Sequence record: NC_061450.1
Reading direction: 5' to 3' (one strand)
DNA length: 64,000 bases
Shown here: positions 2,870-61,132 of the stretch, piece by piece
Layout: the number at the start of each line of letters is the position of its first letter
How positions within the stretch are numbered: the stretch's first letter is position 1
The notes under the pieces: generated by a model
What the model saw: only the letters and a program-made list of their open reading frames with translations
Database searches by the model: none
Told to the model about the DNA's origin: nothing
Position numbers and translations under genes: made by a program

Positions 2870-2879
2870 GTTGTTTTCC

Positions 2880-3512: not shown

Positions 3513-3543
3513 CGTAATCTCCGGTTGTCCTGAATCAGGTAAT

Positions 3544-3553
3544 AAAAATTAGC
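3544..3553 (-). promoter_or_regulatory. Putative late-type promoter motif GCTAATTTTT
   Basis: Recurrent motif, 32 nt upstream of the start at 3512. Confidence 0.5.
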
Positions 3554-3561
3554 GAAGTAGG

Positions 3562-4260
3562 TTACTCTGACCCAGAACCTGGGGTAGTAGAACCATACAC
3601 AATACTAAACACATAGTCCACGCTGTCGAATGGGAAGTCGTTACGGTAGATGATGTAATCGAACCCTTCGAGGCTTATCTCGGCTGGACCAACAAAGTTA
3701 AAGTCATCAAACTCTTGCGCACCATCCCACGAACCAGAGAAGCCGTAGCTGCCGCTGGTGAAGTCGCGGAAGTAACCATAGCCAAGTGCTTTGGGCCATG
3801 CGACATAGAAGAATTTGTTATTGTCTGAGGTACTCTGATTTGGAGGACAGGTAACAAACTGTTCACCCTCAGAGGTTAACTTGGTTGTGAGTGACTTGAA
3901 GAAGGCGCTGTTGTAGCCCGCGATCGAGGTTACTTTATCATGCAGACCAAAGCGAGGACTGAACTGACCTCCCTCAGGAACGCTGACCAACACGATGCTG
4001 CTACGCTCTTTCTCCGCACCAGCACTATCACGCAACACGGCAACCAATGAATGCTCGCCGCTGTCCAGAGTGATGTTGAACTGGTTGCTTGTTGTCAACG
4101 AACCATCATCAGCACGCAGCGTTTTAATCACTGCCGTTCCGTCAACAATGTCCAACGTGCCTGCTGGTGGAACTGAGGACACGCTGATATTGAACTGTGA
4201 CGACAAGTTGAGATTGACGAAGTTATAAATCAGGTTGCCGTTTACGCTGAGACTGGTCAC
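3562..4260 (-). CDS. Hypothetical virion structural protein
   Basis: 232 aa, GTG start with AGGAG RBS, directly downstream of the tail sheath gene; beta-rich composition. Confidence 0.6.
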   Translation of the reverse strand: MTSLSVNGNLIYNFVNLNLSSQFNISVSSVPPAGTLDIVDGTAVIKTLRADDGSLTTSNQFNITLDSGEHSLVAVLRDSAGAEKERSSIVLVSVPEGGQFSPRFGLHDKVTSIAGYNSAFFKSLTTKLTSEGEQFVTCPPNQSTSDNNKFFYVAWPKALGYGYFRDFTSGSYGFSGSWDGAQEFDDFNFVGPAEISLEGFDYIIYRNDFPFDSVDYVFSIVYGSTTPGSGSE

Positions 4261-4281
4261 GAAAGGCTCCTTAAACGTGCA

Positions 4282-4305
4282 AGGGGAGAACCGTAGTCCT
4301 CCCCT
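4282..4305 (-). terminator. Stem-loop (AGGGGAGGAC-TACG-GTTCTCCCCT) after the tail sheath gene; weak terminator or mRNA-stabilising hairpin
   Basis: 10-bp stem with C(UACG)G tetraloop; no long U tract. Confidence 0.5.
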
Positions 4306-4310
4306 GTTGA

Positions 4311-14513: not shown

Positions 14514-17500
14514 TTATTTTGAGATATAACCAGCAACCGCCTGTTTGATGGCTTTGCGACTGATGATAATCTTTTTCTTCGGCTTGTCTGCCAGAGCAGC
14601 TTTGGCTTTCTTGGCCTTCTCCTCGGCTTCGAATTCCTCATACTTGGCTGTATTGTCAGGCAGTTCCTTTTTCCACTGCTTGATGTTCTTCTCATCTGCT
14701 TTGGTCAAAGGATTGGTCTTGCTGCGACTTCTGATCTTAATGTCGTTTGCCCAGAGTTGCTTCTTCATCCAGTCTGACATAAGATGATACTGGTCCTGCA
14801 TAATGCTGTCCAGCATCTTGTCAACGTCTAGGTCTTTCTCACCCAACTCGTCACGCTTCTGTTCAAGTCCAGCACGCAGGATTTTGTTGAGGCTGTTGTA
14901 GGAGAAGTCCCAACCTTTCACATCTTTCTCTGAGGCACCGATTTCAAAATCGATCTCAGGTACGGAAGTGAACTCAAAGTTGTGGCGCTCTTTAACAACC
15001 TGAACTACCGCTGTGGTCATTGCACGTTCAATCATGTCGAGTGCGAGGAAGAACCATTCGTACTTACAGTCCACGGTCAAGCTATCGTGTACCGATACGT
15101 TGAGCAGGAAGTCAGGATATACACCGTTTGCTTTCCAGTAGTCATACTTCATGCGATCAAGGATTCTGATTGCACTCATCATCAGGTCTGAACCAAAGCC
15201 CTGAACTGGACTGTTTACCGCACGACGGTCACAGGCAGCATGTACTTGATCTGCTTCACGATGCGACTTAGGCACCATGTAGCCCCACAGGTGACGACGA
15301 CGACCCACTGGAGATTCGACAAAGTAGTTCTCATGTGCAAAGCGCTTGATGGATTCAAACCATTTGAGTCCTGTTGGGAATCGCTTAAGGAACTTCGCTT
15401 TGATATCAGCGATCTCATCAACTTCACGTCCCGTTGACTTGGCGAGACCCTTGTCACCCTGCTGGTAAATCAGGCCGAAGATTACAGTTTTAACCGCGTT
15501 CCTGATCGGCTTGGTGACTTCCATAATCGGTACGCCGAAGAAGTAACTGGCGTTGATTTTGTGAACATCACCCTCAATATCAACAAGGTGGTGAATCCAA
15601 GGATCAGGAACAGTGCGATAACGGTGGCGCAGACGACGACCAACTTCAAACACTTCTGCAACTTCTGAGTCTCCACTGATAATCGACCAACCTCGGACTT
15701 CGTGTGCCGAGTAGTCGACCTTGATTAGCATACGGCCTGGACGAGCAATCAGGATACGTTTGATCAGCTTGCCCATTTCACTACGCGATGGTACCTGCTG
15801 CAAGTTGGGATCAGACGCTGAGGTACGACCCGTTACAACTCCTAAGTAGCCGTAGCTTGGTCTGATCGCACGGTCATGCTTGAAGTCCTCACTCTCACCC
15901 CAGAGTCTCAGCAGGCTGTTAACATAGGCGTTCTTTAGCTTTTGCGCTTTGCCCAGCTTGTTGTACAAGGCAATCAGAGGCACATCTTTATAGGCCTCTT
16001 GGAAGTCTTTATCCAGCTTGCCTGCCGCTTTACCGTTGTCGCGTTTCTTGGCACCTTCTTTGAGTGGTTTGAGTTTCATCACATCAAAGAACAGAATCTG
16101 CTTGTGCTCCTGCTTGGACAGATCAAACTTGTTGACGTTGACCTTGCCCATTAGACCAAACGCAGGCACATCGTCCGTGGCACAAATCTCTTTGTTGGCG
16201 CGCCTGACCTCAGGACTATCCATGAACTCACGCTCTACGTTGCGCAGTTCTTCGTTGATCTGACTGTTAGGCAGATTGAGTTTAAACAGGTAATCAATGT
16301 CTGCCATTGCACCTGTTGTTTCCATGATACTAAACGCATGTATCTGGTCACTAATCTGCTCACTGACCATAGACCGATACTTCTTGTAGTGAATGTCTTT
16401 GGCACGGCGTACCTGTTGCTCTTGAATCAAGAACGGAACGATAACGTCAAGTCCAGCATACTCCTGCACGTCTTCGTCAAGGTCAACTTCGGCAATTGTC
16501 GCACGTTGCTCTTTACCAAACGCTACGTCAAAGTAAACAGTTGTGCCATACTGCATCGCAAGGTTCGCCAAGCCATAGTAACCATAGCCAGTAACAGACT
16601 GTAGGTTCTTTGCATTCTCATCATTGGCGAACTCACCTGCTTGAATATCCCACACGTTGGCTGCATAGCTACGAATGCCGAAGTTAGAGCGCAATACGTT
16701 AAGGTCAAACTTTGCGTTGGTATAGATCTGGTACTTGTTCTGATTGTCCTCAAAGTAATCACGCATCGCCTCTTCAATCTGGCGAAGTTCTTTGGGACTA
16801 AACGGACTGTCGCGGTGATAGATTGGAATCACGTAAGCAGTCTTGCCGTCATCCGAGAGCTGTACCGTCTGCAATCTGTTTTTGATTCGGTTCAGGTTCT
16901 CGGTTTCTGTATCGACTGCGACCTTCTTGGACTTCTTCAAACGACGCAACAACTTGACCACGTCTTTGACTTGAGTCAGATACACCAGCTTCCAGTTACG
17001 CTTCTTGCCGCACGTTACCTTTGGTATTTTGTACGGCATGCCTTTCTGCAACAGTGGCAGCATCCAGCGCGACATATAGCCCAGAGTATAACTGGTGCCT
17101 ACGATGTTGCGTGGGTTGAGCACGTTGTTGTAGCTGACGTTTGGCACATGGATAAACTCATGTTTACCACGCTTGGTCTTGAGCTTGGTAGGGATCTCAA
17201 CACCAAACCAATGATGGTACATGCCGCCTGAGTAGTCAATGCGTTCGCTGTTCAGAGCACGGAACGGCTGCGTGCCAAACGTCATAACATAGTCAGGCTT
17301 GTAGTCGAGAATCAGATCACGAATACGTTGAGCAAACACCTCATTGGCATCTGTTTTGTACTGCTCAGACTTTTCATAAGTCTTGAACATGTTGTAACTG
17401 ACGACCATGAAGTTCCAATCGTCAATCGTGGTCTTGAGGGGGAAGGTGTCTTCCAGATACTGCATCTGGTTGAGGAACACTTCACCCGTGGTGCCACTAA

Positions 17501-17672
17501 ACATCTTACCGTTTTCTAAATCTTCGGAAGGCATGTGGTCCACAACGAACAACACCTTGCCACCCTTGTTTGTCTTGCTAACGCCTTTGAGGACGCGTAC
17601 ATAATCATAGCTCTGGACGTCACTGAATGCGTCCGGTAGCTGAAAGTCAATCGCCAAATGTTTAGTCTTCAC
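14514..17672 (-). CDS. polA: Family A DNA polymerase with N-terminal UDG-like domain and 3'-5' exonuclease
   Basis: 1052 aa; ExoI VDTET, ExoII NAKFD, ExoIII YAGLD; TGRTSASDPNLQQVP; motif A DYSAHEVR; motif B RNAVKTVIFGLIY; PVQG; motif C VHDS; N-terminal VLFVVDHMP...GKMFSGTTG and KPDYVMTFG resemble the family 4 UDG fold. Confidence 0.93.
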   Translation of the reverse strand: MKTKHLAIDFQLPDAFSDVQSYDYVRVLKGVSKTNKGGKVLFVVDHMPSEDLENGKMFSGTTGEVFLNQMQYLEDTFPLKTTIDDWNFMVVSYNMFKTYEKSEQYKTDANEVFAQRIRDLILDYKPDYVMTFGTQPFRALNSERIDYSGGMYHHWFGVEIPTKLKTKRGKHEFIHVPNVSYNNVLNPRNIVGTSYTLGYMSRWMLPLLQKGMPYKIPKVTCGKKRNWKLVYLTQVKDVVKLLRRLKKSKKVAVDTETENLNRIKNRLQTVQLSDDGKTAYVIPIYHRDSPFSPKELRQIEEAMRDYFEDNQNKYQIYTNAKFDLNVLRSNFGIRSYAANVWDIQAGEFANDENAKNLQSVTGYGYYGLANLAMQYGTTVYFDVAFGKEQRATIAEVDLDEDVQEYAGLDVIVPFLIQEQQVRRAKDIHYKKYRSMVSEQISDQIHAFSIMETTGAMADIDYLFKLNLPNSQINEELRNVEREFMDSPEVRRANKEICATDDVPAFGLMGKVNVNKFDLSKQEHKQILFFDVMKLKPLKEGAKKRDNGKAAGKLDKDFQEAYKDVPLIALYNKLGKAQKLKNAYVNSLLRLWGESEDFKHDRAIRPSYGYLGVVTGRTSASDPNLQQVPSRSEMGKLIKRILIARPGRMLIKVDYSAHEVRGWSIISGDSEVAEVFEVGRRLRHRYRTVPDPWIHHLVDIEGDVHKINASYFFGVPIMEVTKPIRNAVKTVIFGLIYQQGDKGLAKSTGREVDEIADIKAKFLKRFPTGLKWFESIKRFAHENYFVESPVGRRRHLWGYMVPKSHREADQVHAACDRRAVNSPVQGFGSDLMMSAIRILDRMKYDYWKANGVYPDFLLNVSVHDSLTVDCKYEWFFLALDMIERAMTTAVVQVVKERHNFEFTSVPEIDFEIGASEKDVKGWDFSYNSLNKILRAGLEQKRDELGEKDLDVDKMLDSIMQDQYHLMSDWMKKQLWANDIKIRSRSKTNPLTKADEKNIKQWKKELPDNTAKYEEFEAEEKAKKAKAALADKPKKKIIISRKAIKQAVAGYISK

Positions 17673-19808: not shown

Positions 19809-22800
19809 TTAGACGTCCTTAGACGTTGACTTGGTCGTCTTCAACTTGTCCAGAGCGGCGTTGCAACGTTTGATGTTACTCACGTTGTAGCCTGCTTTCA
19901 CAATCTTAATCACACGGGCTTTAGCACGAGCAGCAGTTTCAGTGAACGCAATCCACATGCCAGGACTCTGCTCAAACGTACCGAACTTACGGCTGTTAGG
20001 CAGCTTCTGTCCAACAGCACGGCGCATCTGAGGGTTGGTCGCAAGGTCGAACATGATGCGCAAGCGGTCCTGCATCACCATCGGATAGCACTTGACGTGT
20101 TTCTTGTCAGTTGCTGCACGGTGGCGAATCTGGAAGAACTGTTTCAGTGTGGTCTGCATGTGTGTTGCCTGCGGCACATTGAAGCTCAAGTTCTTACCTG
20201 CAAACACGTCCTGAATAAACTCCAGACGCTTGGCACTCATCGAATCGAAGTCCAGTTTGCGTTTGATTTCGATATAGTCCAAGAACTTCTCGAAGTCTTC
20301 GTAATAGAACAGGTCGATGTAAACATAATCGCCGAACTGTACAAAGTCAAACTGCTTCATGTCCGCTGCATCAGGGTCTGCGGCATCCGCATAGATAGCC
20401 ACAAATCCGTTGTACACAGTAGGCGTGAGTTCCAGACTCATATCACGACCCGCAGGAAGATCATCCAGTGTCACAGCGCCAGACTTCTTGGCTACCTTAG
20501 TGACAGTGTTACCCAACTTAGGCAGTGAAGCAACCTTGCGGGCACGCACGGCTTCTTTGACACCCTCGTTGACTGGCTTTTCCTTCGCGATGTTCTCGCT
20601 GCGTTTCTTGGCACGTACCGCAGTGCGCTCAACCACTTCAACCTTTTTACGGGTCTCTTCGGTGTTTGCTGTCTGCGTTTCGTCTTTGATAGTGTCTTCC
20701 ACTTCAACGGCGGACGCTTCTGCATTAGCACGCTTGCGTTCCTGCTCAGTTGCCCAAGGCTTGCGAACCTTGAAGAACGTGCTCAGGTCTTTCTTGTTGA
20801 CTTTGGTTGCTACGTGAACTTTGGACGCTGGAATGCTTACCAGTTCTTCGCTGCCACTGAGACGCACACGCACTGTAGAGATTGGCGCGTCTGCTTTCAG
20901 TTTGCCGTCTTGGTTACGCACGTTAACGCCAACGATAACACCGTTGCCGAACTCAGTCACAACAGGCATCAGGTGGCAGGCATTTTTCAGCATTTCACCA
21001 GAGGCAAAGTTATGTCCACGCGCCCAATCAAGCAGTCGCTCCAGGCCCCAGCCGTAACGGTCAGGAATCTTCTGGTTGGCAACGATAGGGAACTGATCGA
21101 TTACACGGAAGTCACGCAGTGGCGCAGCAGGTTCCAGTGGGACCATAGCAGCAGCCGTTGTACGGCGCATCTCCGTAAACTCGGCAGTCTCAATGTCGTT
21201 GAGGTCACGCTTGGCCATGAAGTAATCCAAGAAGTCCTCGATGGTGTTGTTGTTGATCAACAACTCGCGGTTCATCTTGATTGGAGCCAGCTCGTACTTA
21301 TCGAGGTCGGCATAACGCTCGTTGCCTTTCTCATCGAACTGCGTCTTCTCCAGTGTCTTCCACATCAGGCGTGCAACTTTACCAACTTCCAGAGTGTGCA
21401 GTGTCATCACCCAATCGATGAATACCACTTCACGCTTCATGTCACCTGGGCGGCCGTTCTCGTCAAACTCGGCAGCAGCAACATCTGGACGGAAGATACG
21501 TGCAGTAGACTGGTCGTAAACACCAGGAGACCAAGGTGTATCGCAGCGGATGATACGGCTACCCATCTGCATGTTGTGACCTTCACTGATTGCCTGTTCG
21601 TTGGCAATAATGATTTGCACACCCTGATTGGTCTTGAACGCATCGAGGTTAGCGACTTTATCTTGACCCAGCTTGCCAACTTCACCGTGGAACAACACAG
21701 CAACGCGCTTGTATTGCTCAGGCAGGGCTTCGTAGATTGCGTTGGCGCTACGGGTGTAACGAGTAAACACAATCAGCTTGCCTTGCACCTCTTCTTTCCA
21801 GTAGTCTGGATCGTCCGGTGGTGGAGTCATTGAAGGAGGCAGCATTTGACGCTGATACGTCTCAGTTTGCTTACGCGCAAGGTACTTGACGCCGTTGAAC
21901 ACAGCAATATCAAGTTCCTTCGGAGTAACGCCTGGCTTCCATTGGAAGATCTGCTGCGTTGCCTCTTCTGGATTGCGGTCATCCTGCACTTCAAAGTGAC
22001 GCTTGATACGGTCGATGATGGTCAGAACCTTAGCACTCACAAAGTTCTTGACGCCAGCACGTTCGAAAGTCTCACGGCCAATGTCATCACCCATCGGGTC
22101 AGTCAGCAGCATTTCCATACGCTGGAAATACAGGTTCAGGTCAGCGTTGCCTGCCAACAGACTACCCAGGATATCGCCTTCATCCAGCTCGGACTCATCG
22201 ATACCTGCATCGTCGCTGCCGCCTTCCGCTTCTTCACCTTCTTCGTCGTCTTCACTTGCACCGCTGGCTTTGCGTTTGGCTTCGGACGCAGCTTTGTCCA
22301 ACAGCTCCAACACTTCCATATACATGGCGTCATACAGTTGCTTGTGCAGCTCAGAGTTAGGAACAGTCGGGTCCGCAATGTCAACCTGCAAGAAGGTATC
22401 GATTGGGTTAGGCAGCATGAACGCCCACGCCTTACGTTTGTACGAGATAAACGCAGTGTGGTTTGACAGACGGCTGTGAGTACGGCGAATCATCGCAGTA
22501 GTACCGTCACCCTGATCAGCAACTTCAAGGTTGTCACCAAAGATAGCTGGAGTCAACAACGCAGCCTGACCAACAACGTCACTCACACGGTCAGTTACCA
22601 GAGTACCGGTAGCAATACGTGCATAGCGAATTGAAGGTGCTGTGAAGATCGCCTTGGCGTTGAAGTGTACCTGCGAACCACTCTGGCCACCTGAGTAGTT
22701 CTTGACCTTGTGTGATTCATCAATCAGGGCATAGCTGAATCCGAAGCGGTTGACGAACTCAACAGCGCCACGAATACGAACACGCACACCACCGATATCA

Positions 22801-25622
22801 ACGTTGAGCACACCAGTCTGGAGGAAGCTCAGGCCAACAACAAAGATGGTATTCTGTGGAGCCTGAGAGATAACGTCATAAAGACGCTGTTCGCCCCAGG
22901 TGTTCACAGTGTCGCTGGTGATTGGTACAACGTTCCAACCATCAAGGAACTTGTGCGTATCGTCTGCCCAGGTAGTTGCAAGGTTAGAAGGGCACACAAC
23001 CAGAGGCTTGATGTTCTCTTCGCCAAGGTCGTTAAGCTCTTTCATCATGGCAGCAATGTCGGTGATACCGATGATTGTCTTACCACCACCAGGTGCAACA
23101 AACAGTACAGCATAGCGAGGACGACGACGCAGTGTCTGGTGAGCACCCAACTGGTGAGGCATCAACTGCGTGCCTGGCTTGAGTCCAGGGATCTGAATGT
23201 CGCTTGCCTGAATACCAGTGTCTGGCTTGAGGCGATCAACTTCCTGCTCTGCCTGCTCAAAGATTTCCAGCGTGTTTGGAATAACGTCGCTGTACATCGT
23301 TGCGAATGGCAGCACAATGTTCATCAGACGGTTTGACTGAGGAGCATCTTGGCTTTCGCTGAGGCTACTGAACAACGCTTTGCGATCACCACCTTTGATA
23401 GCAGCACACGCCTGACGGAACAACGTACCACCGAAGTAGTTGTTGAGTCGTGCCATGTCACCCAGCTTGTTGGCTGTGGTAGCTTGGAAGAAGTGCGTGT
23501 GGTCCTGTTGCGCTTCCAGCACGGCAGTAATATCACCGCCCATTTCACGCATCAACGTGGTAGTCAGGTTGGAAGCACGCATACCCGCAGCATCGTTTAA
23601 CACACGGGTTACAATGCGCATCAATGCCAGCTCAGGAGCAACGCCTTCATTGACCGTGAAGTTGTTTTCAATCAGGCCCTGATAAAGGTTGTCGTCATAG
23701 CTTGAATCACTGAGGCTTGAGTCTTCGCCAGTGAAACCCATTTCATCACGCGTTGCCTGCACAAGAGACTTGAGATCAGGTACTTGCTTTTGACGCAGCA
23801 TGTGTCCATAGGTGGCACATACCTGACTCACGATTTCATACAGGTCCTTGCTGGCGCCCGGGCTGAACTCGATGTTCTTGTCAACTACCTTGCTAACGTA
23901 ACGGCCGTTGCCTGCTTCTGCAAGTCCCGCACTAACCGCCAAGTCACTTGCTGCCTGATACTTACCAGCACGCGACGAGGTAGCAATGCTTTCCAGCATA
24001 TCTGCCGCATTACGGAAGTTAGGGCTTTCACCTGGCTCAGCAAAGTCATAACCCAGCATGTCTGCTGTGTCCAGCGCTGTTGGAATCTTGGCACCAACGG
24101 TACGGGTTGAGTTTACGCTGATACCGCCAGAAGAGGACGTTTCAACCACAACGGCGAAGTCAGGGTCGATACCGATACAGATGTTGCTGTATTTGGACAG
24201 ACTCTTGGCCAGCTCTTGTGCTTTGCGGTCAATGTCCAAATCGTTTTCACGCGCAGCAAACAGCGGAGTACGCAGCGTATCGTGATCGACGGACAGTGGA
24301 ATGCCTTTAGCAAACAGCTTGGTCAGAACTTCGTTGAGGTCATGCTCATACTTGCTGACGGTCTGGACGTCAATATCGTCACGACTTGGCAGGACACTCA
24401 TCATACCGTTAGGCATGATAGTTAGACCACGATCGTCCGCAACAGTTTGATGCACAGAGTAGCCAAACTTCTCACGCAGTTGTTTCAACATTGGCAGCAT
24501 GGTTGCCGATGTGACGTAGCGTGGGATTGAAGCACGACGGGTTACGTTACCACCACGCGCTGAACCCTGAACACGGCAATAGTATTCTGCCCAGCTCTGG
24601 AACCAACGATAAACACACATGGTGGCAAGGTCACTAGCACCCTGACAGATGTAGTCAACGATTGCCTGTTCAACACGAACCACCAGCGCACCCTCAACGC
24701 GCACATCGATAGCGAGGTTGACAGGGTTGACTTCAACAGGCGTGTCAGCACTGATCTTCATTGCCTGCATCTTACGTTCAAGCAGATTACGACCAGGTAC
24801 GGAACGCAGACCGATGCGCATAAAGTCGCCCAGCGTGTTCACACAGTCTTTGTCCAAGTTTTGGAACAGGTCAATGTTCTGACCATTCAATGACGAGTGA
24901 ATGCTGCTGAGGATGTTGTTGATAGCTTCCCAATCAAAGTCCAGAGGCAGTTTGTCAGTCATGGCATAGAACAGGCTCTGTCCACCACGACGAACATCAC
25001 CAAACACATACTGGTGAATCTGGTTGGCAGCACGGATAGCATTCTGAGCAATCTCAGACTGATACACGGCTACGTTCTTTGAGCGGAACTGTTCGTCATC
25101 GTCGAGACGCGGACGGTTGCTGCCCTGATCGTTAAACACGTTGAAGGTACCCATGGCTGCCACAGGTGTGGTTGCACAGGGAATGCCGCTCATGATAATG
25201 TCGAACCCATCAGAGTAACGCTCAATCACCGCGTTAGCACGACTGGACATGTGTGCAGCCAGCAGCGCTTTAACTTCTTTTGGAATCTTAGGCGAGTTCA
25301 ACAACACGTTGATCTTTTCGCCTTCGGAGCGAATCATCTGGCCTACGCGTGTTGCAAACTCATCAGAGCCAGCATCAAGGATATCCTCGAACTGTGCGCC
25401 ATTCTCAACAATGTAGCCGAGAACATTGTAGGTTGCGTAGAGACGTGCAACGGTGGCAGCAACAAAACGGCCCAGAGTATCGAATGCACCACGCTGCTTA
25501 CCTGCAGGGTACATGAGTTCCATGCGCTGTTTTACTTGCTCATCGATTGGGTGAAGGGCAAGTGCCTTCTCAACCGATTCTGCAATCTGGCTGGAGCCGG
25601 TTTTGGACATACTAATAATCAT
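19809..25622 (-). CDS. Very large SNF2-family helicase/ATPase, possibly virion-associated
   Basis: 1937 aa; LMPHQ, VAPGGGKT, LIDESHKVKN, ATGT, LIVFTRY, SEGHNMQ, PWSPGVYDQSTARIFR. Confidence 0.85.
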   Translation of the reverse strand: MIISMSKTGSSQIAESVEKALALHPIDEQVKQRMELMYPAGKQRGAFDTLGRFVAATVARLYATYNVLGYIVENGAQFEDILDAGSDEFATRVGQMIRSEGEKINVLLNSPKIPKEVKALLAAHMSSRANAVIERYSDGFDIIMSGIPCATTPVAAMGTFNVFNDQGSNRPRLDDDEQFRSKNVAVYQSEIAQNAIRAANQIHQYVFGDVRRGGQSLFYAMTDKLPLDFDWEAINNILSSIHSSLNGQNIDLFQNLDKDCVNTLGDFMRIGLRSVPGRNLLERKMQAMKISADTPVEVNPVNLAIDVRVEGALVVRVEQAIVDYICQGASDLATMCVYRWFQSWAEYYCRVQGSARGGNVTRRASIPRYVTSATMLPMLKQLREKFGYSVHQTVADDRGLTIMPNGMMSVLPSRDDIDVQTVSKYEHDLNEVLTKLFAKGIPLSVDHDTLRTPLFAARENDLDIDRKAQELAKSLSKYSNICIGIDPDFAVVVETSSSGGISVNSTRTVGAKIPTALDTADMLGYDFAEPGESPNFRNAADMLESIATSSRAGKYQAASDLAVSAGLAEAGNGRYVSKVVDKNIEFSPGASKDLYEIVSQVCATYGHMLRQKQVPDLKSLVQATRDEMGFTGEDSSLSDSSYDDNLYQGLIENNFTVNEGVAPELALMRIVTRVLNDAAGMRASNLTTTLMREMGGDITAVLEAQQDHTHFFQATTANKLGDMARLNNYFGGTLFRQACAAIKGGDRKALFSSLSESQDAPQSNRLMNIVLPFATMYSDVIPNTLEIFEQAEQEVDRLKPDTGIQASDIQIPGLKPGTQLMPHQLGAHQTLRRRPRYAVLFVAPGGGKTIIGITDIAAMMKELNDLGEENIKPLVVCPSNLATTWADDTHKFLDGWNVVPITSDTVNTWGEQRLYDVISQAPQNTIFVVGLSFLQTGVLNVDIGGVRVRIRGAVEFVNRFGFSYALIDESHKVKNYSGGQSGSQVHFNAKAIFTAPSIRYARIATGTLVTDRVSDVVGQAALLTPAIFGDNLEVADQGDGTTAMIRRTHSRLSNHTAFISYKRKAWAFMLPNPIDTFLQVDIADPTVPNSELHKQLYDAMYMEVLELLDKAASEAKRKASGASEDDEEGEEAEGGSDDAGIDESELDEGDILGSLLAGNADLNLYFQRMEMLLTDPMGDDIGRETFERAGVKNFVSAKVLTIIDRIKRHFEVQDDRNPEEATQQIFQWKPGVTPKELDIAVFNGVKYLARKQTETYQRQMLPPSMTPPPDDPDYWKEEVQGKLIVFTRYTRSANAIYEALPEQYKRVAVLFHGEVGKLGQDKVANLDAFKTNQGVQIIIANEQAISEGHNMQMGSRIIRCDTPWSPGVYDQSTARIFRPDVAAAEFDENGRPGDMKREVVFIDWVMTLHTLEVGKVARLMWKTLEKTQFDEKGNERYADLDKYELAPIKMNRELLINNNTIEDFLDYFMAKRDLNDIETAEFTEMRRTTAAAMVPLEPAAPLRDFRVIDQFPIVANQKIPDRYGWGLERLLDWARGHNFASGEMLKNACHLMPVVTEFGNGVIVGVNVRNQDGKLKADAPISTVRVRLSGSEELVSIPASKVHVATKVNKKDLSTFFKVRKPWATEQERKRANAEASAVEVEDTIKDETQTANTEETRKKVEVVERTAVRAKKRSENIAKEKPVNEGVKEAVRARKVASLPKLGNTVTKVAKKSGAVTLDDLPAGRDMSLELTPTVYNGFVAIYADAADPDAADMKQFDFVQFGDYVYIDLFYYEDFEKFLDYIEIKRKLDFDSMSAKRLEFIQDVFAGKNLSFNVPQATHMQTTLKQFFQIRHRAATDKKHVKCYPMVMQDRLRIMFDLATNPQMRRAVGQKLPNSRKFGTFEQSPGMWIAFTETAARAKARVIKIVKAGYNVSNIKRCNAALDKLKTTKSTSKDV

Positions 25623-26125
25623 TGTGCGTCACCTACTTTTCCATGATTATCAACGATGGTCTGCCACAGAGGAGACGCAGGGATTTTACGATCAGTAGCA
25701 AGGTCCAGCAGCGCTGCCGCAAGAGCATACGACTGATTGCGAGACAGGCGACGAAATACATCCCGCGTGTCCATGCCACGAATGTCTTCGTTGGTACGGA
25801 GCTTGTAGATATCGCGGTAGTCAGTGATCATCTTAGACAGATCACCGTCTGCGTCGTCTTGGTCAATCTCAGCACTCTGCTGGGTGTAGCTAATGGTTTT
25901 AGCCAGCACGTCAATCAGACGCAACAGGTCCTGTTGTGTGTACGCAACAAAGTTAGGCAGACCGCCTTTACCCAGTACGTCCAGCACCGACTTGGGAAGT
26001 TCAATCGGTGTGCGTTGATCGGCGCTGACACTTTCAAGCAGTGACTGAGCAGCACGGGAATACGGAGTATCACCTCGCGCGGCATCAGCCAAGACTTGTC
26101 TCAGCTTTTGGTTGGTTTCAGACAC
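25619..26125 (-). CDS. Hypothetical protein
   Basis: 168 aa, GTG start with GGAG RBS, ATGA coupling to the SNF2 gene. Confidence 0.65.
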   Translation of the reverse strand: MSETNQKLRQVLADAARGDTPYSRAAQSLLESVSADQRTPIELPKSVLDVLGKGGLPNFVAYTQQDLLRLIDVLAKTISYTQQSAEIDQDDADGDLSKMITDYRDIYKLRTNEDIRGMDTRDVFRRLSRNQSYALAAALLDLATDRKIPASPLWQTIVDNHGKVGDAQ

Positions 26126-26134
26126 GTTCTTCTC

Positions 26135-55172: not shown

Positions 55173-55466
55173 CTATTGAGGATCGTCAGGAAGATTTAGA
55201 ATAGCATCCAGATCAAGACCGTGTAGACCATGGCCTTCAGGAAACGGATCATGTTTGACATACTGAAAATTGGGACTGTAGTAGGCAAAGCTGTTGCGTG
55301 CTACGTTCTGCGTCTCGCGCTTACCTGCTGCCTGCTTGTTAGCCACGTGGCGATCAATGCGTGCCTTGCGCGGGTCAGGCTTTTTGTCCAGGTCGTCAAA
55401 AATACCAACGACACGACAACGACGGTAGTTCGGATGAACGCTGATATGTTTGACGGTTGCTGTCAT
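55173..55466 (-). CDS. Hypothetical protein
   Basis: 97 aa, ATGA-coupled to the TnpB-lobe gene. Confidence 0.6.
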   Translation of the reverse strand: MTATVKHISVHPNYRRCRVVGIFDDLDKKPDPRKARIDRHVANKQAAGKRETQNVARNSFAYYSPNFQYVKHDPFPEGHGLHGLDLDAILNLPDDPQ

Positions 55467-56497
55467 TTATACTTCCCCTTAACGGAGTAGATAAGACCTT
55501 CTTTACGCATGACAATAAGGTATTTGGCCTTGCGGTCAGAATTGATCTCACCACGAATCACATTGCTGATGTGGATTTTCTTTGCGTCACCAACACTGAG
55601 CGCTGTATTGGATTCAACAAAGCTAAAGCCAGAATCAGAGACAGATAAGGTATTGTTTTTTGCATCCGGGTTTAGTTTATCCGGACGACTACCTTGCTTG
55701 TTGGTATTGTCGGACCAACGTTGCCAATGGGCTGCACAAGAAGTCAAAGCACGACTAACAAGGCTGCGAGGGATTTTCAGGCCATGCTTTAAGTAAGCTG
55801 ATCGCAGCTCCGTGATATAGGTGCTGGTCGGCAATGGAGCTTCTTTGCTTTTCTGCTTAGGGAATCGATTGATTGTATATGCCCACCAATGATTGTAAGC
55901 ATCAACCTTGATAGCAATATACTTCTCAAGGATTGCAGCCTGTTCCAAAGTACACTCGATTTCAAATTCAAATGCTTTTGGATCGTCTTTGTCGCGGAGC
56001 TTGATTTCATTCTGCTCTGCAAGCCAGACCTTCTTGTTCATAAATCGAACGCAGTTAATCCAAGAGTACAGGAAAGAAACCTTGGACGAGTCTTTTGGAG
56101 GAACATCACCAAACAACTCCACCAGCAACGGAATGGCAAAACCAAAATCAATCTTTTGCTGAATGAACAACAGTTTGATGTCGGCATCGGTAAGATTGGT
56201 TCCAGCACGATAGGAATCAAAGAACTTTTTAGTTCTGCCATAACTAGCCAACAAGTCAGCAGGCATTACGTCCAATTCCTTGGAGGTATATTCCTTATCA
56301 ATCAAGATCGACAAAGCCTGAGCGATTGAAATCTCAGGCCAGGTACGATAGTCTTCTAATGGAAATTTTCTGCGATGATGCTCATACAGATAAAGGAAAT
56401 CCCCGATGCGGGAATAACGCGACTCAATATCTGCGAGGTTGTCGCTCTGGCTTGACACCCGGTCTGCGGTTTTCGCGGGGCGCTCTGTCTTCGCCAT
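55463..56497 (-). CDS. Protein with unknown N-terminal domain fused to a TnpB/IS605-OrfB-like REC-WED lobe, no RuvC
   Basis: aa 174-344: KAFEFEIECTLEQAAILEK...AYN (HTH_OrfB_IS605-like), YITELRS, KIPRSLVSRALTSCAAHWQRW, GSRPDKL, then WED-like strands; stop before any RuvC Asp. Confidence 0.55.
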   Translation of the reverse strand: MAKTERPAKTADRVSSQSDNLADIESRYSRIGDFLYLYEHHRRKFPLEDYRTWPEISIAQALSILIDKEYTSKELDVMPADLLASYGRTKKFFDSYRAGTNLTDADIKLLFIQQKIDFGFAIPLLVELFGDVPPKDSSKVSFLYSWINCVRFMNKKVWLAEQNEIKLRDKDDPKAFEFEIECTLEQAAILEKYIAIKVDAYNHWWAYTINRFPKQKSKEAPLPTSTYITELRSAYLKHGLKIPRSLVSRALTSCAAHWQRWSDNTNKQGSRPDKLNPDAKNNTLSVSDSGFSFVESNTALSVGDAKKIHISNVIRGEINSDRKAKYLIVMRKEGLIYSVKGKYK

Positions 56498-56505
56498 AGG
56501 TCCTC

Positions 56506-58179
56506 TCAGTGTTTTTCGGTGTAGTATTTGATATACGCACTATTTACAGTTTCTTGCTGATCACGAGAAACCTTCTTACTTGTGATACAACGTCGGTCAC
56601 TGCTAAACGTATGGCCATTCTCCCACACCTTCTTGAAAAGAAGCACCGAATCGGTATCGTCGTAGAAAGGCTTTACATCCATTGGGATGACGTTGTTGTA
56701 CTCACCTAGTATGGAGGCACCATCAAATTCAGCGCTGCACCAAAGGTTGGTAGCAATCACAGAAAGCAGTTGACGAGATTCGGTCCCCTGAAGAAAATGA
56801 CTCAACACAGAGTAACGTTCCCGTTTGAACTTGGAGACGCCAACACGCTGCACACAGCCCATGTCATTTTTAAAATGATACACACCATCAGGGCAACGAG
56901 TTTTTGAGGCAATGGTTGTCAGCAAAGTTTCAATCGATTTACTGATCTCCTTGTGCAGACTTTTCCAGTTGCGCCAAATGTCCATCACAAACTTTCTATG
57001 CAACTGCTTAGTTTCGTTGTTGTCCACTCCTTCAATTTTCTTCAACTTGGCACGTACCTTGCTGTCGCGCCAAAGACTTTCAAACAGAGGTGTTCTGTAA
57101 GGAATCAAAGATTGCTTGTCGTGGTCGAATACGATAATGATAGGAACGTTGTTCCAGCCTTTGAAAATCCCACCAAAGTTAAGTTGCTTGGCAGTCTCGC
57201 GAGTTATGCCTAAGATTTTGGCAAGCTCCGTGTGACTAAGCTGGATTTTCTCAGGAAAAGGTACTTCGTATTTGATGAACAACTCTTTGAGGATTGTAAC
57301 CTGAGCCTGAGGCATGTCGTAGTTTGAGGCGTAGTCGTGATCAAAGCACAGGTGTTTTACCACACGGAGCAAGGCCTGACTATTGCCAAACATCCTGCTG
57401 CCCACTTCGTTTATCCTGTAGCTATCGTAAAACTCAACTATCCTATCACCAGGAACTCCGCCCACTACCTTCATTTTAAGATTGCAGATCTGCTCCAGCA
57501 CAACCCACAGTCTCTGATAGCTGCTCTTTTTACCTTTCGCCGATAAATTTCTCAGGCAGTCCATCATACGGTCCAAATAAAAGCGATAGGGCCTTTGATT
57601 CTCCCACGCCTGCTTGATTAGTTGCTCAAGCTCCTTGTTGCCCCGACGCATGTGTTTAGCATCAGGACGACGGAATTTTGGCTTTTTGATCTCCGCCACA
57701 ATACTTTTTTCGACAATTCCTGCAATAGACGGAGCTTTCGCCTTGCGTCGCCTGCGGACCGTAATGTCATACAGGGGCTCATCTATGATAAAGGCCTTGC
57801 GAAATGCCCGTAGGAAGCTTGGCTTGAACTGCCATTCGCGGCTAAGACCTAAAATTTTGCTGTGTTTTGTGACAATTAAGGTTTTCTCCAACCACTCCTG
57901 AACAGCAACCGATTTATGGTAGTGCATGGCATATCTGGCGGGATTCCCCCTTTGATTGAACCACGACCACGCCATAGGGATTTGACCCTTGTCGCTGCGG
58001 CTGGTTAACCCTGTGCGTTCTGCAAGGTGCAGGAATAAGAAACCAAGACTCTCTCTAAACTTTGTTGCATCGGCCCCTTGAGGTACTGGGCACTTATCTA
58101 TGGTCTGATCCCAAAACAGCCTGTGGACAGACAGAGGAACAAGACGCGTTCCACGGTAAGTGATTTTCTTCATCAACAC
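56506..58179 (-). CDS. Compact family-A-like polymerase (TV-Pol-like), no exonuclease, possible N-terminal wHTH
   Basis: GSRMFGNSQAL (motif 2), NYDMPQAQVTIL (motif A, D288), RETAKQLNFGGIF (motif B, R327/K331), FLQGTES, SAEFDGA (motif C, D486); 557 aa. Confidence 0.7.
   Translation of the reverse strand: MLMKKITYRGTRLVPLSVHRLFWDQTIDKCPVPQGADATKFRESLGFLFLHLAERTGLTSRSDKGQIPMAWSWFNQRGNPARYAMHYHKSVAVQEWLEKTLIVTKHSKILGLSREWQFKPSFLRAFRKAFIIDEPLYDITVRRRRKAKAPSIAGIVEKSIVAEIKKPKFRRPDAKHMRRGNKELEQLIKQAWENQRPYRFYLDRMMDCLRNLSAKGKKSSYQRLWVVLEQICNLKMKVVGGVPGDRIVEFYDSYRINEVGSRMFGNSQALLRVVKHLCFDHDYASNYDMPQAQVTILKELFIKYEVPFPEKIQLSHTELAKILGITRETAKQLNFGGIFKGWNNVPIIIVFDHDKQSLIPYRTPLFESLWRDSKVRAKLKKIEGVDNNETKQLHRKFVMDIWRNWKSLHKEISKSIETLLTTIASKTRCPDGVYHFKNDMGCVQRVGVSKFKRERYSVLSHFLQGTESRQLLSVIATNLWCSAEFDGASILGEYNNVIPMDVKPFYDDTDSVLLFKKVWENGHTFSSDRRCITSKKVSRDQQETVNSAYIKYYTEKH
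56541..56549 (-). promoter_or_regulatory. Putative phage promoter motif CTGTAAATA
   Basis: 44 nt upstream of the start at 56497 (inside the 3' end of the upstream CDS). Confidence 0.5.
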
Positions 58180-58203
58180 TCGCTTTTGTACTTCGATGCC
58201 AGT

Positions 58204-58212
58204 TATTTACAA
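58204..58212 (-). promoter_or_regulatory. Promoter motif variant TTGTAAATA
   Basis: 25 nt upstream of the polymerase-like gene. Confidence 0.5.
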
Positions 58213-58665
58213 ATTCCTTTGCGTTCGCTGGCTTTTCTTCGGAGCATGGACATGAAAGGCTTATAAAATCTCTGGGTACGTCTATAAAACAAGAATATCC
58301 TCTATACCAACATGGGATCAGAGGCAGATAACACGATGAATGAGACAGTTAGGGTCTCATGATTTTAGCGATATTTTTCGGCTAGATCTGGTCTATGGCA
58401 CACCGTAGGCAGGTCACTAGGCGCGGTATGGACGCCATAGGTCGATCCCGTCAATAGCACCCAAAAACCGTACATTAGAGGGCTATTTCGAACAGTGAGC
58501 TTCATAGGTCGCCCAGGAGCGAAATCTGTGGAGGTCGAAAAGTGCCGTCCTCAAGGAATTACGCCCAGGGCATCCGTAGACACCCTATAGGCGCTTCCTC
58601 TGCTGGTCAAAAATTTCTAATCCAAGATTTTCAGACGAATCTCAGAGATTTTTACCCGCCATAGA
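58213..58665. other. Long non-coding region with long-range inverted repeats (origin or ncRNA candidate)
   Basis: AAAATCTCTG (58265-58274) / CAGAGATTTT (58643-58652); GTCTATGGC (58391-58399) / GCCATAGAC (58658-58666); ATGAGAC hairpin at 58340-58360. Confidence 0.4.
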
Positions 58666-60479: not shown

Positions 60480-60499
60480 ATAGTTCTCCTCTAGTCATG

Positions 60500-60508
60500 A
60501 AAATTAGT
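60500..60508 (-). promoter_or_regulatory. Putative late-type promoter motif ACTAATTTT in the divergent promoter region
   Basis: 21 nt upstream of the start at 60479; the strand switch occurs here. Confidence 0.5.
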
Positions 60509-60583
60509 GACAAGATTTTAGCATTCACTCCTAAGAATAGTTATTTCTTGTTGCTTATAACTTTTAGCCCATGTGAGGCCATT

Positions 60584-61132
60584 ATGCGCATTCTTACGGG
60601 CGACCCTGGTAAAGTTAATTTTGCCCTCTCAGTTATTGAGGTCAAAGGTAAACACCTAGATGTGATTGGCACGCGTATGTTTCGCAAGCCTATCCAGAAT
60701 TTGCATCTGGACATGCGTCAGCCTACCAAAGAGTTCCTTCAAGAACTGCGCGAAATGAACAAGAAATATGGACCGTTTGATGCCTTGTGCTTTGAACGAT
60801 TCCAGTCGCGTGGACTAGGAGGCAACACAATAGAGGCGATCAGTTTGATGCTGGGTGTTGTATCAGTGTTTGCCCTACAACAAAACATACCTCTTGACTT
60901 GATCACAGCAAGCCAGTGGAAAAATGCTTTCAATCGTCAGATGGTCCTCAAAGACTTTTATGCCGAGTTCAACCTAACGTCCAAAAAGAGTCGCAAAGCA
61001 ATCCATGAGTTTGATGCGACGCTTATCGGCATTTATACCTTCTGCCGACACAACAACGTTAAACCATTTGCTGGGTTCAATAAGGTGATCTATCCCTTTA
61101 TTGAGAAGTTCCTGTCCAGCCCCGTCCTTTAG
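60584..61132 (+). CDS. RuvC-like Holliday junction resolvase
   Basis: Likely start MRILTGDPGKVNFA (GAGG RBS); catalytic D (GDPG), E (CFERF), D (HEFDA); 182 aa. Confidence 0.8.
   Translation: MRILTGDPGKVNFALSVIEVKGKHLDVIGTRMFRKPIQNLHLDMRQPTKEFLQELREMNKKYGPFDALCFERFQSRGLGGNTIEAISLMLGVVSVFALQQNIPLDLITASQWKNAFNRQMVLKDFYAEFNLTSKKSRKAIHEFDATLIGIYTFCRHNNVKPFAGFNKVIYPFIEKFLSSPVL

What the first reader, a model, noticed from the sequence alone, without database searches (positions are those of the whole stretch)
56506..58179. Second, minimal family-A-like polymerase with intact catalytic motifs and no proofreading domain
Seen in sequence: GSRMFG-NSQAL, YD288MPQAQ, R327ETAK331QLNFGGIF, LQGTES and EFD486G occur in the order and spacing of Pol A motifs 2, A, B, the QG motif and C. 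No exonuclease motifs are present, and the N-terminal 250 aa has a wHTH-like HSKILGLSREWQF segment. Established: such divergent PolA/T7-RNAP-related enzymes resemble the TV-Pol family (Iyer, Abhiman and Aravind), which were proposed to act as primases or specialised polymerases. Inference: the phage already has a complete replicative Pol A, so this enzyme probably does something else, such as origin-specific priming, short RNA/DNA synthesis or modified-nucleotide incorporation. Three spot-checked 60-nt lines in this gene and its neighbour were about 35-48% GC versus about 60% in one SNF2 line, which weakly hints at a separately acquired module.
Basis: partly seen in the sequence, partly recalled or inferred. 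Interest (0 to 1): 0.75.

Follow-up and report, generated by a model that had tools for sequence, protein, structure and literature searches.

The report
Unannotated TV-Pol-type polymerase in jumbo phage
A gene that databases call "hypothetical" or "putative helicase" in an Erwinia jumbo phage encodes a stripped-down relative of DNA polymerase I (TV-Pol type) with its catalytic residues intact, kept as a core gene by a whole group of jumbo phages alongside their normal replicative polymerase; this makes it a good candidate for a second, specialised DNA-synthesis enzyme such as a primase-polymerase.

Summary
The window is Erwinia jumbo phage pEa_SNUABM_5 (99.8%).

No Pfam polymerase model hits the protein. 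Three independent lines still place it in the Pol I / T7-RNAP superfamily:
- A confident AlphaFold model (pLDDT 89) whose 50 best PDB matches are all family-A DNA polymerases or single-subunit RNA polymerases.
- A family profile whose only PDB sequence hits are Pol gamma, aligned on motif B.
- Invariance of the hairpin Arg, both catalytic Asp and the O-helix Lys in 33 homologs.

HHalign links the family end to end (99.1%, E 4.6e-19) to Microcystis phage Ma-LMM01 MAP_030. That protein is very probably the founding phage member of the TV-Pol family of Iyer, Abhiman and Aravind.

The gene is a single-copy, syntenic core gene in 57 Erwinia, Dickeya and Yersinia jumbo-phage records. Each of these also has a full exo+ Pol A. 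The profile is nearer to DNA polymerases than to T7-like RNA polymerases, but Gln/His replaces the steric-gate Glu.

Most likely function (inferred): a primase-polymerase or initiator. The GC "foreign module" hint is not supported. Verdict: a new member of a known but almost uncharacterised family.

The parts
56506..58173 (-). CDS of the TV-Pol-type polymerase (555 aa from the annotated ATG; the ORF extends to a GTG at 58179). GenBank pEaSNUABM5_00225, annotated 'putative helicase'.
   Evidence: phrog_30690, function unknown, E 1e-155. No Walker A motif.
57604..58173 (-). N-terminal accessory domain (aa 1-190), mostly helical, with a winged-helix-like helix plus beta-hairpin at aa 86-118 (window 57820-57918; contains HSKILGLSREWQF). 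Homologous to the N-terminal domain of Ma-LMM01 MAP_030.
   Evidence: AF2 secondary structure. HHalign alignment starts at aa 6 and covers this domain. The fold identity of the domain was not tested on its own.
57481..57588 (-). Thumb: strand E196-199 leading into two antiparallel helices (aa 200-212 and 216-231).
   Evidence: AF2 DSSP. Matches the TV-Pol definition of a bi-helical coiled-coil thumb.
57376..57474 (-). Beta-hairpin plus the 'T/DxxGR'-type motif (VGSR260 ... Q266). R260 is invariant.
   Evidence: Aligned to VTGRTSA..PNLQQIP of the phage Pol A and to T7 DNAP.
57289..57327 (-). Motif A: SNYD286MPQAQ291VTIL. D286 is invariant. Q291 sits at the D+5 position held by the steric-gate Glu in Pol A DNA polymerases.
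   Evidence: HHalign places the family's conserved Q opposite T7 DNAP E480.
57157..57240 (-). Fingers HTH / O-helix with motif B (LSHTELAKILGITR325ETAK329QLNF333GGIF337KG). K329 is invariant.
   Evidence: Family profile hits Pol gamma motif B only. Weak HTH Pfam hits here. Residue table.
56776..56811 (-). Palm helix with the H459..Q462-G463-x-E465 motif (equivalent to the 'QG' helix of Pol I).
56710..56742 (-). Motif C beta-turn-beta: WCSAE482-F-D484-G. D484 and G485 are invariant. Most of the family has EHDG.
58180..58665 (-). Gene-free gap directly upstream (486 nt). A gap is kept at this position in all relatives examined (218-740 nt), with conserved sequence blocks and a modest excess of predicted structure. 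It may be a leader, promoter, ncRNA or origin. That it belongs to the system is a hypothesis.
55463..56497 (-). Immediately downstream 344-aa gene (8-nt spacing), a possible partner. Conserved next to the polymerase gene in several lineages but replaced in Alexandra, AD1 and Y3.
   Evidence: No family assignment.

Best explanation
The ORF encodes a catalytically competent, proofreading-less, minimal polymerase of the Pol I / T7-RNAP superfamily, of the TV-Pol type.

Its parts are an N-terminal helical domain with a winged-helix-like element, a two-helix thumb, a beta-hairpin that donates an invariant Arg, a palm with the two metal-binding Asp (D286, D484), and an HTH-based fingers domain with the invariant O-helix Lys (K329). 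The fold, the family link and the conservation are shown here.

It is a vertically inherited, single-copy core gene of the enterobacterial 'Lupandier-group' jumbo phages. It lies in the replication/recombination gene region and coexists with a complete replisome: exo+ Pol A, clamp, clamp loader and a DnaG-type primase.

Inferred mechanism: it is a DNA-templated primase-polymerase or initiator. Through its N-terminal domain and/or a partner protein it would start or restart DNA synthesis at particular sites and hand the short product to the replicative Pol A and clamp. This is analogous to the only characterised TV-Pol, CCPol-MP of SCCmec.

Sugar specificity is open. The motif pattern and the profile comparisons are DNA-polymerase-like, but Gln/His replaces the steric-gate Glu throughout the family.

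Sub-confidences: Pol A-superfamily fold and TV-Pol homology about 0.9; active enzyme about 0.8; DNA rather than RNA product about 0.6; priming or initiation role about 0.35-0.4.
For: - Structure: AF2 with the 22-sequence alignment gives pLDDT 89 and pTM 0.81. All 50 top Foldseek PDB matches are family-A DNAPs (Taq, Pol theta, gamma, nu, apicoplast Pol, DpoZ; 314-378 aligned columns in most, probability 0.72-1.0) or T7/mitochondrial RNAPs. In BFVD, after its own family, the best matches are giant-virus proteins of about 1000 aa (E 2e-5) and phage Pol I.
- Sequence to known polymerases: the family profile against PDB sequences hits Pol gamma only, on motif B, best E 0.012.
- Profile comparison: HHalign against the phage-group Pol A domain gives P 0.0013 over 211 collinear columns covering all motifs. 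Reversed-profile controls give P 0.25-0.78.
- DNAP versus RNAP: against T7-like DNAPs P is 0.023. Against T7-like RNAPs P is 0.39, the same as the control.
- TV-Pol link: the family HMM hits Ma-LMM01 MAP_030 and nothing else in that genome, at 38.8 bits and E 5e-12. HHalign A2 against A7 gives 99.1% and E 4.6e-19. MAP_030 lies beside IS200/IS605 tnpA and tnpB, as Iyer et al. describe for TV-Pol elements.
- Conservation: catalytic residues are invariant in 33 homologs.
- Distribution: the gene is present in 57 phage records, single copy, in the same position. Synteny is conserved in metagenomic relatives.
- Precedent: CCPol-MP is a biochemically shown primase-polymerase (PMC7581432).
Against: - No biochemical, genetic or expression data exist for any member of this branch.
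- These phages already encode a DnaG-type primase, so a second primase is not obviously needed.
- None of the partners that led to the prim-pol prediction for TV-Pols is adjacent here: no D5-like helicase, resolvase or integrase.
- Statistical support for the link to canonical Pol A is modest at the sequence level: Foldseek E-values are 2e-3 or worse, HHalign probability is 18%, and there is no Pfam DNA_pol_A hit.
- That MAP_030 is the exact Ma-LMM01 protein listed by Iyer et al. is inferred from context. Their supplement was not readable.
- The Arg of RxxxK is not conserved.
- The protein evolves fast: 54% identity to Yoloswag against 91% for Pol A.
Confidence: 0.5

Rival explanations
1. It is a minimal single-subunit DNA-dependent RNA polymerase (T7/N4-like in principle). 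It would transcribe a subset of phage genes or make long RNA primers, with the N-terminal domain acting as a promoter-recognition module.
For: - The top three Foldseek PDB hits are mitochondrial and T7 RNAPs.
- The steric-gate Glu of DNA polymerases is absent; the position is Q or H in all 33 members.
- The protein has an N-terminal domain with a winged-helix-like element.
- No phage RNAP is known in this phage group (PMC7412058).
Against: - The profile comparison with T7-like RNAPs gives P 0.39, equal to the reversed control, while DNAP profiles give 0.0013 and 0.023.
- Motif B has the DNAP pattern Kxxx[YF]GxI[FY], and the residue equivalent to T7 Y639 is Phe in most members.
- The RNAP Foldseek alignments are long, with rmsd of 19-27 A.
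- There is no Pfam RNA_pol hit.
- The phage group encodes sigma-like factors for the host RNAP.
Confidence: 0.1
2. It is an accessory repair, gap-filling or translesion DNA polymerase, analogous to the exo-less Pol theta or Pol nu. It would serve recombination-dependent replication together with the nearby SbcCD, RuvC-like resolvase and exonucleases, and would not prime.
For: - The architecture is DNAP-like and lacks an exonuclease domain.
- It lies among recombination and repair genes.
- CCPol without MP is only a primer-dependent polymerase.
Against: - The short two-helix thumb and the N-terminal DNA-binding-like domain resemble initiator-type TV-Pols more than repair enzymes.
- There is no direct evidence either way.
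Confidence: 0.2
3. It is a decaying remnant of a TV-Pol mobile element with no function for the phage.
For: - TV-Pols are typical of transposons.
- Relatives lie next to transposases in Ma-LMM01 and in L009.
- The sequence evolves fast.
Against: - The ORF is intact and single copy at the same position in 57 phage genomes.
- The active-site residues are invariant despite 17-25% overall identity.
- No transposase is adjacent in the jumbo phages.
Confidence: 0.04
4. It is a helicase (the GenBank annotation) or an HTH transcription regulator (the weak Pfam hits).
For: - GenBank product name is 'putative helicase'.
- HTH_Crp_2 and Sigma70_r4 hit aa 311-336 at E about 0.01.
Against: - There is no Walker A or DEAD motif.
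- No helicase family hits the protein.
- The HTH stretch is the O-helix region of the fingers, which in this superfamily is itself an HTH.
- The HTH hits are below the gathering thresholds.
Confidence: 0.02

Closest known systems
TV-Pol family (Iyer, Abhiman & Aravind 2008, PMC2579912), specifically the subset with an N-terminal globular domain, represented by Microcystis phage Ma-LMM01 MAP_030
   Same: - Homologous over the N-terminal domain and the whole polymerase core (HHalign 99.1%, E 4.6e-19).
- Minimal architecture: bi-helical thumb, Arg hairpin, two-Asp palm and HTH fingers with a conserved Lys.
- No nuclease domain.
- Coexists with the genome's own replicative polymerase.
   Different: - It is not in a recognisable mobile element. 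No D5-like helicase, resolvase, integrase or transposase is adjacent in the jumbo phages.
- It is a syntenic core gene of a jumbo-phage clade.
- The Arg of RxxxK is variable.
- The Ma-LMM01 clade itself has a degenerate motif B.
CCPol-MP primase-polymerase of staphylococcal SCCmec (PMC7581432; PMC10201439)
   Same: - A TV-Pol-class, exonuclease-less family-A polymerase carried in addition to the normal replisome.
- The model for how such an enzyme can prime de novo with help from a small partner, and for initiation at a site next to its own operon.
   Different: - CCPol is recognised by PolA domain models; this protein is not.
- No MP-like OB-fold partner or Cch2 helicase has been identified next to it.
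- No sequence-level hit between the two was obtained here.
Canonical family-A DNA polymerases (E. coli Pol I Klenow, Taq, T7 gp5, Pol gamma, Pol theta, and the phage's own Pol A at 14514-17672)
   Same: - Fold.
- Order and spacing of the GR...QxxP motif, motif A, motif B (Kxxx[YF]GxI[FY]), the QG helix and motif C.
   Different: - No 3'-5' or 5'-3' exonuclease domain and a much smaller thumb.
- Gln/His replaces the steric-gate Glu, and HDG/FDG replaces HDE.
- Below detection by Pfam DNA_pol_A.
- About 555 aa, against 1052 aa for the phage's Pol A.
T7-like / mitochondrial single-subunit RNA polymerases
   Same: - Same superfamily fold and the top Foldseek scores.
- An N-terminal accessory domain precedes the thumb.
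   Different: - No profile-level similarity (P 0.39).
- Phe rather than Tyr at the Y639-equivalent position in most members.
- No specificity loop was identified.
- About 300 aa shorter.

Membership tests
Pol I / T7-RNAP polymerase superfamily (family-A fold) | Right-hand fold with an RRM-type palm, helical fingers inserted after the first palm strand, and a helical thumb | tested here: met
   AF2 model with pLDDT 89. All 50 best PDB Foldseek matches are family-A DNAPs or ssRNAPs. Phage Pol I appears among the BFVD matches.
Pol I / T7-RNAP polymerase superfamily (family-A fold) | Two catalytic Asp (motifs A and C), the O-helix Lys (motif B) and the Arg of the T/DxxGR hairpin | tested here: met
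   D286, D484, K329 and R260 are invariant in 33 homologs. The motif B Arg (R325) is not conserved.
Pol I / T7-RNAP polymerase superfamily (family-A fold) | Recognition by curated sequence models (Pfam DNA_pol_A PF00476 or RNA_pol PF00940) | tested here: not met
   No hit for any of the 22 members, even at E<=1. NCBIfam also gives none. Only profile-level links were found: Pol gamma motif B at E 0.012 and HHalign P 0.0013.
Family-A DNA polymerases proper | Steric-gate Glu five residues after the motif A Asp | tested here: not met
   The position is Q (29 sequences) or H (4 Ma-LMM01-clade members and Yoloswag) in all 33 members, never E. Register is supported by the HHalign alignment to T7 DNAP E480.
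TV-Pol family | Sequence homology to a founding member | tested here: met
   The family HMM hits only Ma-LMM01 MAP_030 in that genome (E 5e-12). HHalign gives 99.1% and E 4.6e-19. Caveat: that MAP_030 is the protein Iyer et al. listed is inferred from its position next to IS605-type genes; the supplement was not readable.
TV-Pol family | Minimal polymerase domain (bi-helical thumb, Arg hairpin, palm, HTH fingers) never fused or linked to nuclease domains | tested here: met
   AF2 secondary structure, no exonuclease domain, weak HTH hits on the fingers, family definition.
TV-Pol family | Fusion or neighbourhood with a D5-like helicase, or with a resolvase, integrase or transposase (mobile-element context) | tested here: not met
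   None is adjacent in the window or in syntenic relatives. This context is seen only for distant members: L009 next to IS21-type genes and Ma-LMM01 next to IS200/605.
TV-Pol family | Primase plus polymerase activity | not testable with these tools
   Needs biochemistry. It has been shown only for CCPol-MP.
CCPol-MP type primase | Small OB-fold ssDNA-binding partner encoded next to the polymerase, plus a cognate helicase | tested here: inconclusive
   The downstream 344-aa gene is conserved in some lineages only and has no assignable family. No helicase is adjacent.
T7-like single-subunit RNA polymerase | Profile similarity to T7/SP6/phiKMV RNAPs, and a Tyr at the motif B position that reads the 2'-OH | tested here: not met
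   HHalign P is 0.39, equal to the reversed control. The position is Phe in most members.

The most novel reading that the evidence does not exclude
The polymerase and the positionally conserved, structure-prone gene-free region directly upstream (58180-58665) form one functional unit. A transcript or strand of that region would serve as the specific primer or template for the enzyme. This would be either an RNA-primed phage origin, in the manner of ColE1 RNA II and Pol I, or a templated-synthesis module loosely comparable to polymerase + ncRNA pairs such as retrons. Either would be a new way of initiating or diversifying DNA synthesis in jumbo phages.
Probability: 0.07. Interest if true: 0.85.

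Novelty: new member of a known kind. Interest (0 to 1): 0.45.

Why it matters
TV-Pols are thought to resemble the ancestor of both Pol I-type DNA polymerases and T7-type RNA polymerases, yet only one (CCPol-MP) has been studied biochemically.

This work gives a well-supported functional class to a protein that is 'hypothetical' or mis-annotated in 57 jumbo-phage genomes and has no Pfam or PHROG function.

It also shows that a TV-Pol can be a stable core gene of large phages that already have a full replisome and a DnaG primase.

That raises a concrete, testable question: what does a second, proofreading-less family-A enzyme that lacks the steric-gate Glu do in jumbo-phage replication?

If it primes, it would be a second example of the third, non-DnaG and non-AEP, class of primases. 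It is also a compact candidate enzyme for unusual nucleotide incorporation.

Tried and rejected
- First AF2 run with only 5 close homologs gave pLDDT 59 with a disordered palm and was unusable. It was replaced by the 22-sequence run.
- phmmer against PDB found nothing.
- Pfam, NCBIfam and PADLOC scans of all members found no polymerase or defence family.
- The search for related loci on IMG/VR failed. The alignment was too diverse, and the one usable pattern gave no confirmed relative.
- The Ma-LMM01 clade profile alone shows no link to Pol A (P 0.44). The link to Pol A rests on the jumbo-phage branch.
- The neighbour gene as a TnpB fragment was not supported. HHalign against Ma-LMM01 TnpB gave probability 0.1% with 5- and 9-sequence profiles, and there was no PDB sequence hit. 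By eye its pattern does resemble the WED/REC part of TnpB, but no tool result supports that.
- For the upstream gap, Rfam gave no hit and there are no iteron-like repeats.
- A long-range closing stem in the gap looked compensatory in the window, L006 and Yoloswag. It did not generalise in a duplex test against shuffles across 14 phages; only the window, L006 and L003 reached p<0.05.
- The consensus fold of the gap is weak (-18 kcal/mol over 579 columns).
- The GC/codon argument for recent acquisition is rejected.
- The helicase annotation is rejected because there is no P-loop.
Full report
**What is there.** The window matches Erwinia jumbo phage pEa_SNUABM_5 (MW366843, 267 kb, genus Rivsvirus) at 99.8% protein identity over this gene. 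Window position equals record position minus 124000. The ORF 56506..58179 on the minus strand is real. GenBank starts it at the ATG at 58173 (555 aa, P0001) and calls it 'putative helicase'.

**Curated libraries say nothing about a polymerase.** Pfam gives only sub-threshold HTH hits at aa 311-336. PHROGs gives phrog_30690, function unknown, at E 1e-155. NCBIfam and PADLOC give nothing. phmmer against PDB sequences gives nothing. There is no Walker A motif, so the helicase annotation has no basis.

**The family is very small.**
- The word-indexed search found 4 relatives.
- An exhaustive HMMER profile search of 1.84 billion representative proteins found 23 at E<=1e-3.
- In 50,697 cultured-phage records, tblastn with four different members finds it in up to 57 records: Erwinia 48, Dickeya 8, Yersinia 1. 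It is always single copy, always at about 172-187 kb in all but two records (Yersinia fHe-Yen9-02 and Erwinia vB_Ea_2910A, whose records start elsewhere), and always 'hypothetical' apart from the helicase label.
- These are the enterobacterial members of the 'Lupandier' jumbo-phage group (PMC7412058).
- Gene order around it is conserved even in a metagenomic relative whose protein is only about 17% identical (L004).

**Is it a polymerase?** Five lines of evidence bear on this.

1. *Conservation.* The 22-sequence alignment has a mean column identity of 24%, yet the invariant or >=90% columns are exactly the putative active-site positions. The family consensus reads VGGRxFExxGGFQxLP / NYDxxSSQLxILK / KxxxYGxIF / LAHxIQGxE / SxEHDG. 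In a 33-sequence alignment that adds eight further jumbo phages and the Ma-LMM01 clade, G258, R260, D286, K329, E465, D484 and G485 are invariant.
2. *Structure.* AlphaFold with 5 sequences failed (pLDDT 59). With 22 sequences it gave pLDDT 89 and pTM 0.81. The elements in order are two antiparallel helices (thumb), a beta-hairpin before R260, a strand ending in D286, a helical fingers block that includes the K329 helix, and a beta-turn-beta carrying D484. All 50 best Foldseek matches in the PDB are family-A DNA polymerases or T7/mitochondrial RNA polymerases. The E-values are modest (2e-3 to 0.3) but probabilities are mostly 0.9-1.0, and most of the DNA-polymerase matches align over about 314-378 columns. 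In BFVD, after its own family come two giant-virus proteins of about 1000 aa (E 2e-5 and 1e-4) and phage Pol I proteins.
3. *Profile against PDB sequences.* All 14 hits are Pol gamma, aligned on motif B, with best E 0.012.
4. *HHalign.* Against a profile of the phage group's own Pol A polymerase domain, P is 0.0013 over 211 collinear columns that pair every motif with its counterpart. Reversed-profile controls give P 0.25-0.78.
5. *The HTH hits are not a contradiction.* Iyer et al. showed that the fingers core of this superfamily is a tri-helical HTH carrying the RxxxK motif.

**Which branch?** Iyer et al. listed cyanophage Ma-LMM01 among TV-Pol carriers, so I fetched that genome.
- The family HMM hits one ORF only, MAP_030 (506 aa, 'hypothetical'), at 38.8 bits and E 5e-12 over all 156 ORFs of at least 120 aa.
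- MAP_030 lies next to an IS200/IS605 pair: Y1 TnpA and TnpB. [quoted passage not shown]
- HHalign between the jumbo-phage family and the MAP_030 clade gives probability 99.1% and E 4.6e-19 over 393 columns, starting at residue 6. The N-terminal domain is therefore shared too.
- I conclude the protein is a member of the TV-Pol family. One caveat remains: the paper's supplement with gi numbers could not be read.
- Ma-LMM01's own replicative polymerase is the separate split Pol A, MAP_178/180.

**DNA or RNA?**
- HHalign of the family against T7/SP6/phiKMV RNA polymerases gives P 0.39, the same as the control.
- Against the DNA polymerases of the same three phages it gives P 0.023, and against the Lupandier Pol A P 0.0013.
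- Motif B has the DNA-polymerase pattern K-x3-[YF]-G-x-I-[FY]. The position equivalent to T7 RNAP Y639 is Phe in most members.
- On the other side, the residue five positions after the motif A Asp is Gln or His in all 33 sequences and never Glu (register). In Klenow (E710) and T7 DNAP (E480) this residue is the steric gate against ribonucleotides, which is established knowledge (Astatke et al. 1998, cited in PMC10201439).
- I therefore rate a DNA product as more likely than an RNA product (about 0.6) but treat sugar selectivity as open.

**What does it do?** The following is shown here.
- The phage has a complete replicative Pol A with an exonuclease domain at 14514-17672. It also has a clamp, a clamp loader, helicases, SbcCD, a RuvC-like resolvase and, just outside the window, a DnaG-type primase.
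- The TV-Pol gene is kept intact, with an invariant active site, across a clade in which its overall identity falls to about 17-25%. Pol A stays above 80%.

So it is a functional enzyme under selection for catalysis, and fast-evolving elsewhere.

The following is inferred. By analogy with the only characterised TV-Pol, CCPol-MP, it could be a primase-polymerase or initiator that hands over to the replicative enzyme. CCPol-MP becomes a de novo DNA primase with a small partner and prefers a site next to its own operon. Iyer et al. also predicted prim-pol activity for the family. I favour this reading at about 0.35-0.4. An exo-less repair or gap-filling polymerase is the main rival (0.2), and a minimal RNA polymerase is a weaker one (0.1).

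- GC: the gene is 46.1% GC against a window mean of 48.6% (sd 1.6%). Its GC3 and codon usage are ordinary, and the SNF2-like gene is 51.4%, not 60%. Together with the deep synteny, this rejects the idea of a recently acquired module.
- The downstream 344-aa gene sits next to the polymerase gene in the Rivsvirus, Yoloswag, SNUABM_18/21/36 and Dickeya JA lineages (69-25% identity). It is replaced by unrelated proteins of about 165-174 aa in Alexandra, AD1 and Y3.
- A relationship of that gene to TnpB could not be shown.

**The upstream gap.**
- Every relative examined has a gene-free gap directly upstream of the polymerase gene. It is 486 nt in the window (58180-58665) and 218-740 nt elsewhere.
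- It has no ORF longer than 46 aa on the coding (minus) strand, and the longest ORF on either strand is 62 aa. It has no Rfam match and no repeats.
- Close relatives share conserved blocks and several hairpins with compensatory changes. One is a 5-6-bp stem just before the start codon, 58228-58232 paired with 58198-58202.
- Predicted folding energy on the sense strand is lower than for shuffles in all 7 phages tested (z -1.7 to -4.9). It is always lower than for the antisense strand. Six coding controls averaged about -1.
- A long-range closing stem that looked compensatory in three phages did not generalise.
- Several relatives begin the gap with a terminator-like hairpin, seen in the sequences printed.
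- The gap is therefore most simply a terminator plus a promoter and a long structured leader. A role as an origin, a primer RNA or a template is the speculative 'novel case'.

**Verdict.** The protein is a previously unrecognised branch of the known TV-Pol family, fixed as a core gene in a group of jumbo phages. Its biochemical activity and biological role remain to be tested.

Noticed in passing
window 58180-58665 (minus-strand sense); also L006:5509-6000, L007:5334-6000, L008:5507-6006, L004:7556-8000, L012:2583-2970, L003:7265-8000: A gene-free gap of 390-740 nt is kept directly upstream of the polymerase gene in these loci (L011 has a shorter gap of 218 nt). It has conserved blocks (for example TGAGACCCTAACTGTCTCA and GTCTGAAAATC) and no Rfam hit. 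Sense-strand folding z-scores are -1.7 to -4.9 in 7 phages, always lower than antisense. A long-range closing stem is significant only in the window, L006 and L003.
   Followed up: partly
window 58198-58202 pairing with 58228-58232: A small stem in the 5' leader about 20-55 nt before the start codon encloses AAGGAAT..TGTAAATAA. It keeps pairing through double changes in 4 phages (A4 columns 520-525 with 549-554). It may be a translational control element.
   Followed up: no
window 55463-56497 (-): The 344-aa downstream neighbour has no family in Pfam, PHROGs or PDB sequences. By eye its C-terminal two thirds resemble the WED/REC pattern of TnpB without a RuvC domain, and the last ~70 aa look beta-rich. 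HHalign to a real TnpB (Ma-LMM01 MAP_031) shows nothing. It is present in some lineages and replaced by a ~170-aa protein in Alexandra, AD1 and Y3.
   Followed up: partly
L021 (Dickeya phage AD1) 1501-3087; L022 (JA11) 1501-3141: The deposited CDSs AD1_214 and JA11 gp200 start about 140-180 codons too late, although the upstream frame is open and homologous. This explains the truncated JA11 entry in BFVD (405 aa); the 284-aa JA13 entry may have the same cause but was not checked.
   Followed up: partly
window 14514-17672 versus 56506-58173: Evolutionary rates differ sharply. The replicative Pol A is 91% identical to Yoloswag's and 52% to Pseudomonas phage Lu11's. The TV-Pol is 54% identical to Yoloswag's and undetectable by tblastn outside the Erwinia, Dickeya and Yersinia phages.
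   Followed up: partly
L009 (GCA_024449895.1 contig, 3532-4500) and L013 (Ma-LMM01 22746-26129): Distant family members sit beside transposase genes: an rve + IstB IS21-type pair in L009, and an IS200/IS605 tnpA + tnpB pair in Ma-LMM01. P0012 in L009 is a 322-aa version that lacks the N-terminal domain.
   Followed up: partly
L010 2509-8684: Another family member (P0018) lies in a phage-like contig near a UvrD-type helicase, a UDP-glucose dehydrogenase-like gene and QueC (7-deazaguanine pathway). This hints at a DNA-modification context in that lineage.
   Followed up: no
window 60480-60584: Transcription diverges here, between the 366-aa gene (minus strand) and the RuvC-like resolvase gene (plus strand), about 2 kb upstream of the gap. 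Cumulative GC skew shows no turning point anywhere in the window.
   Followed up: no
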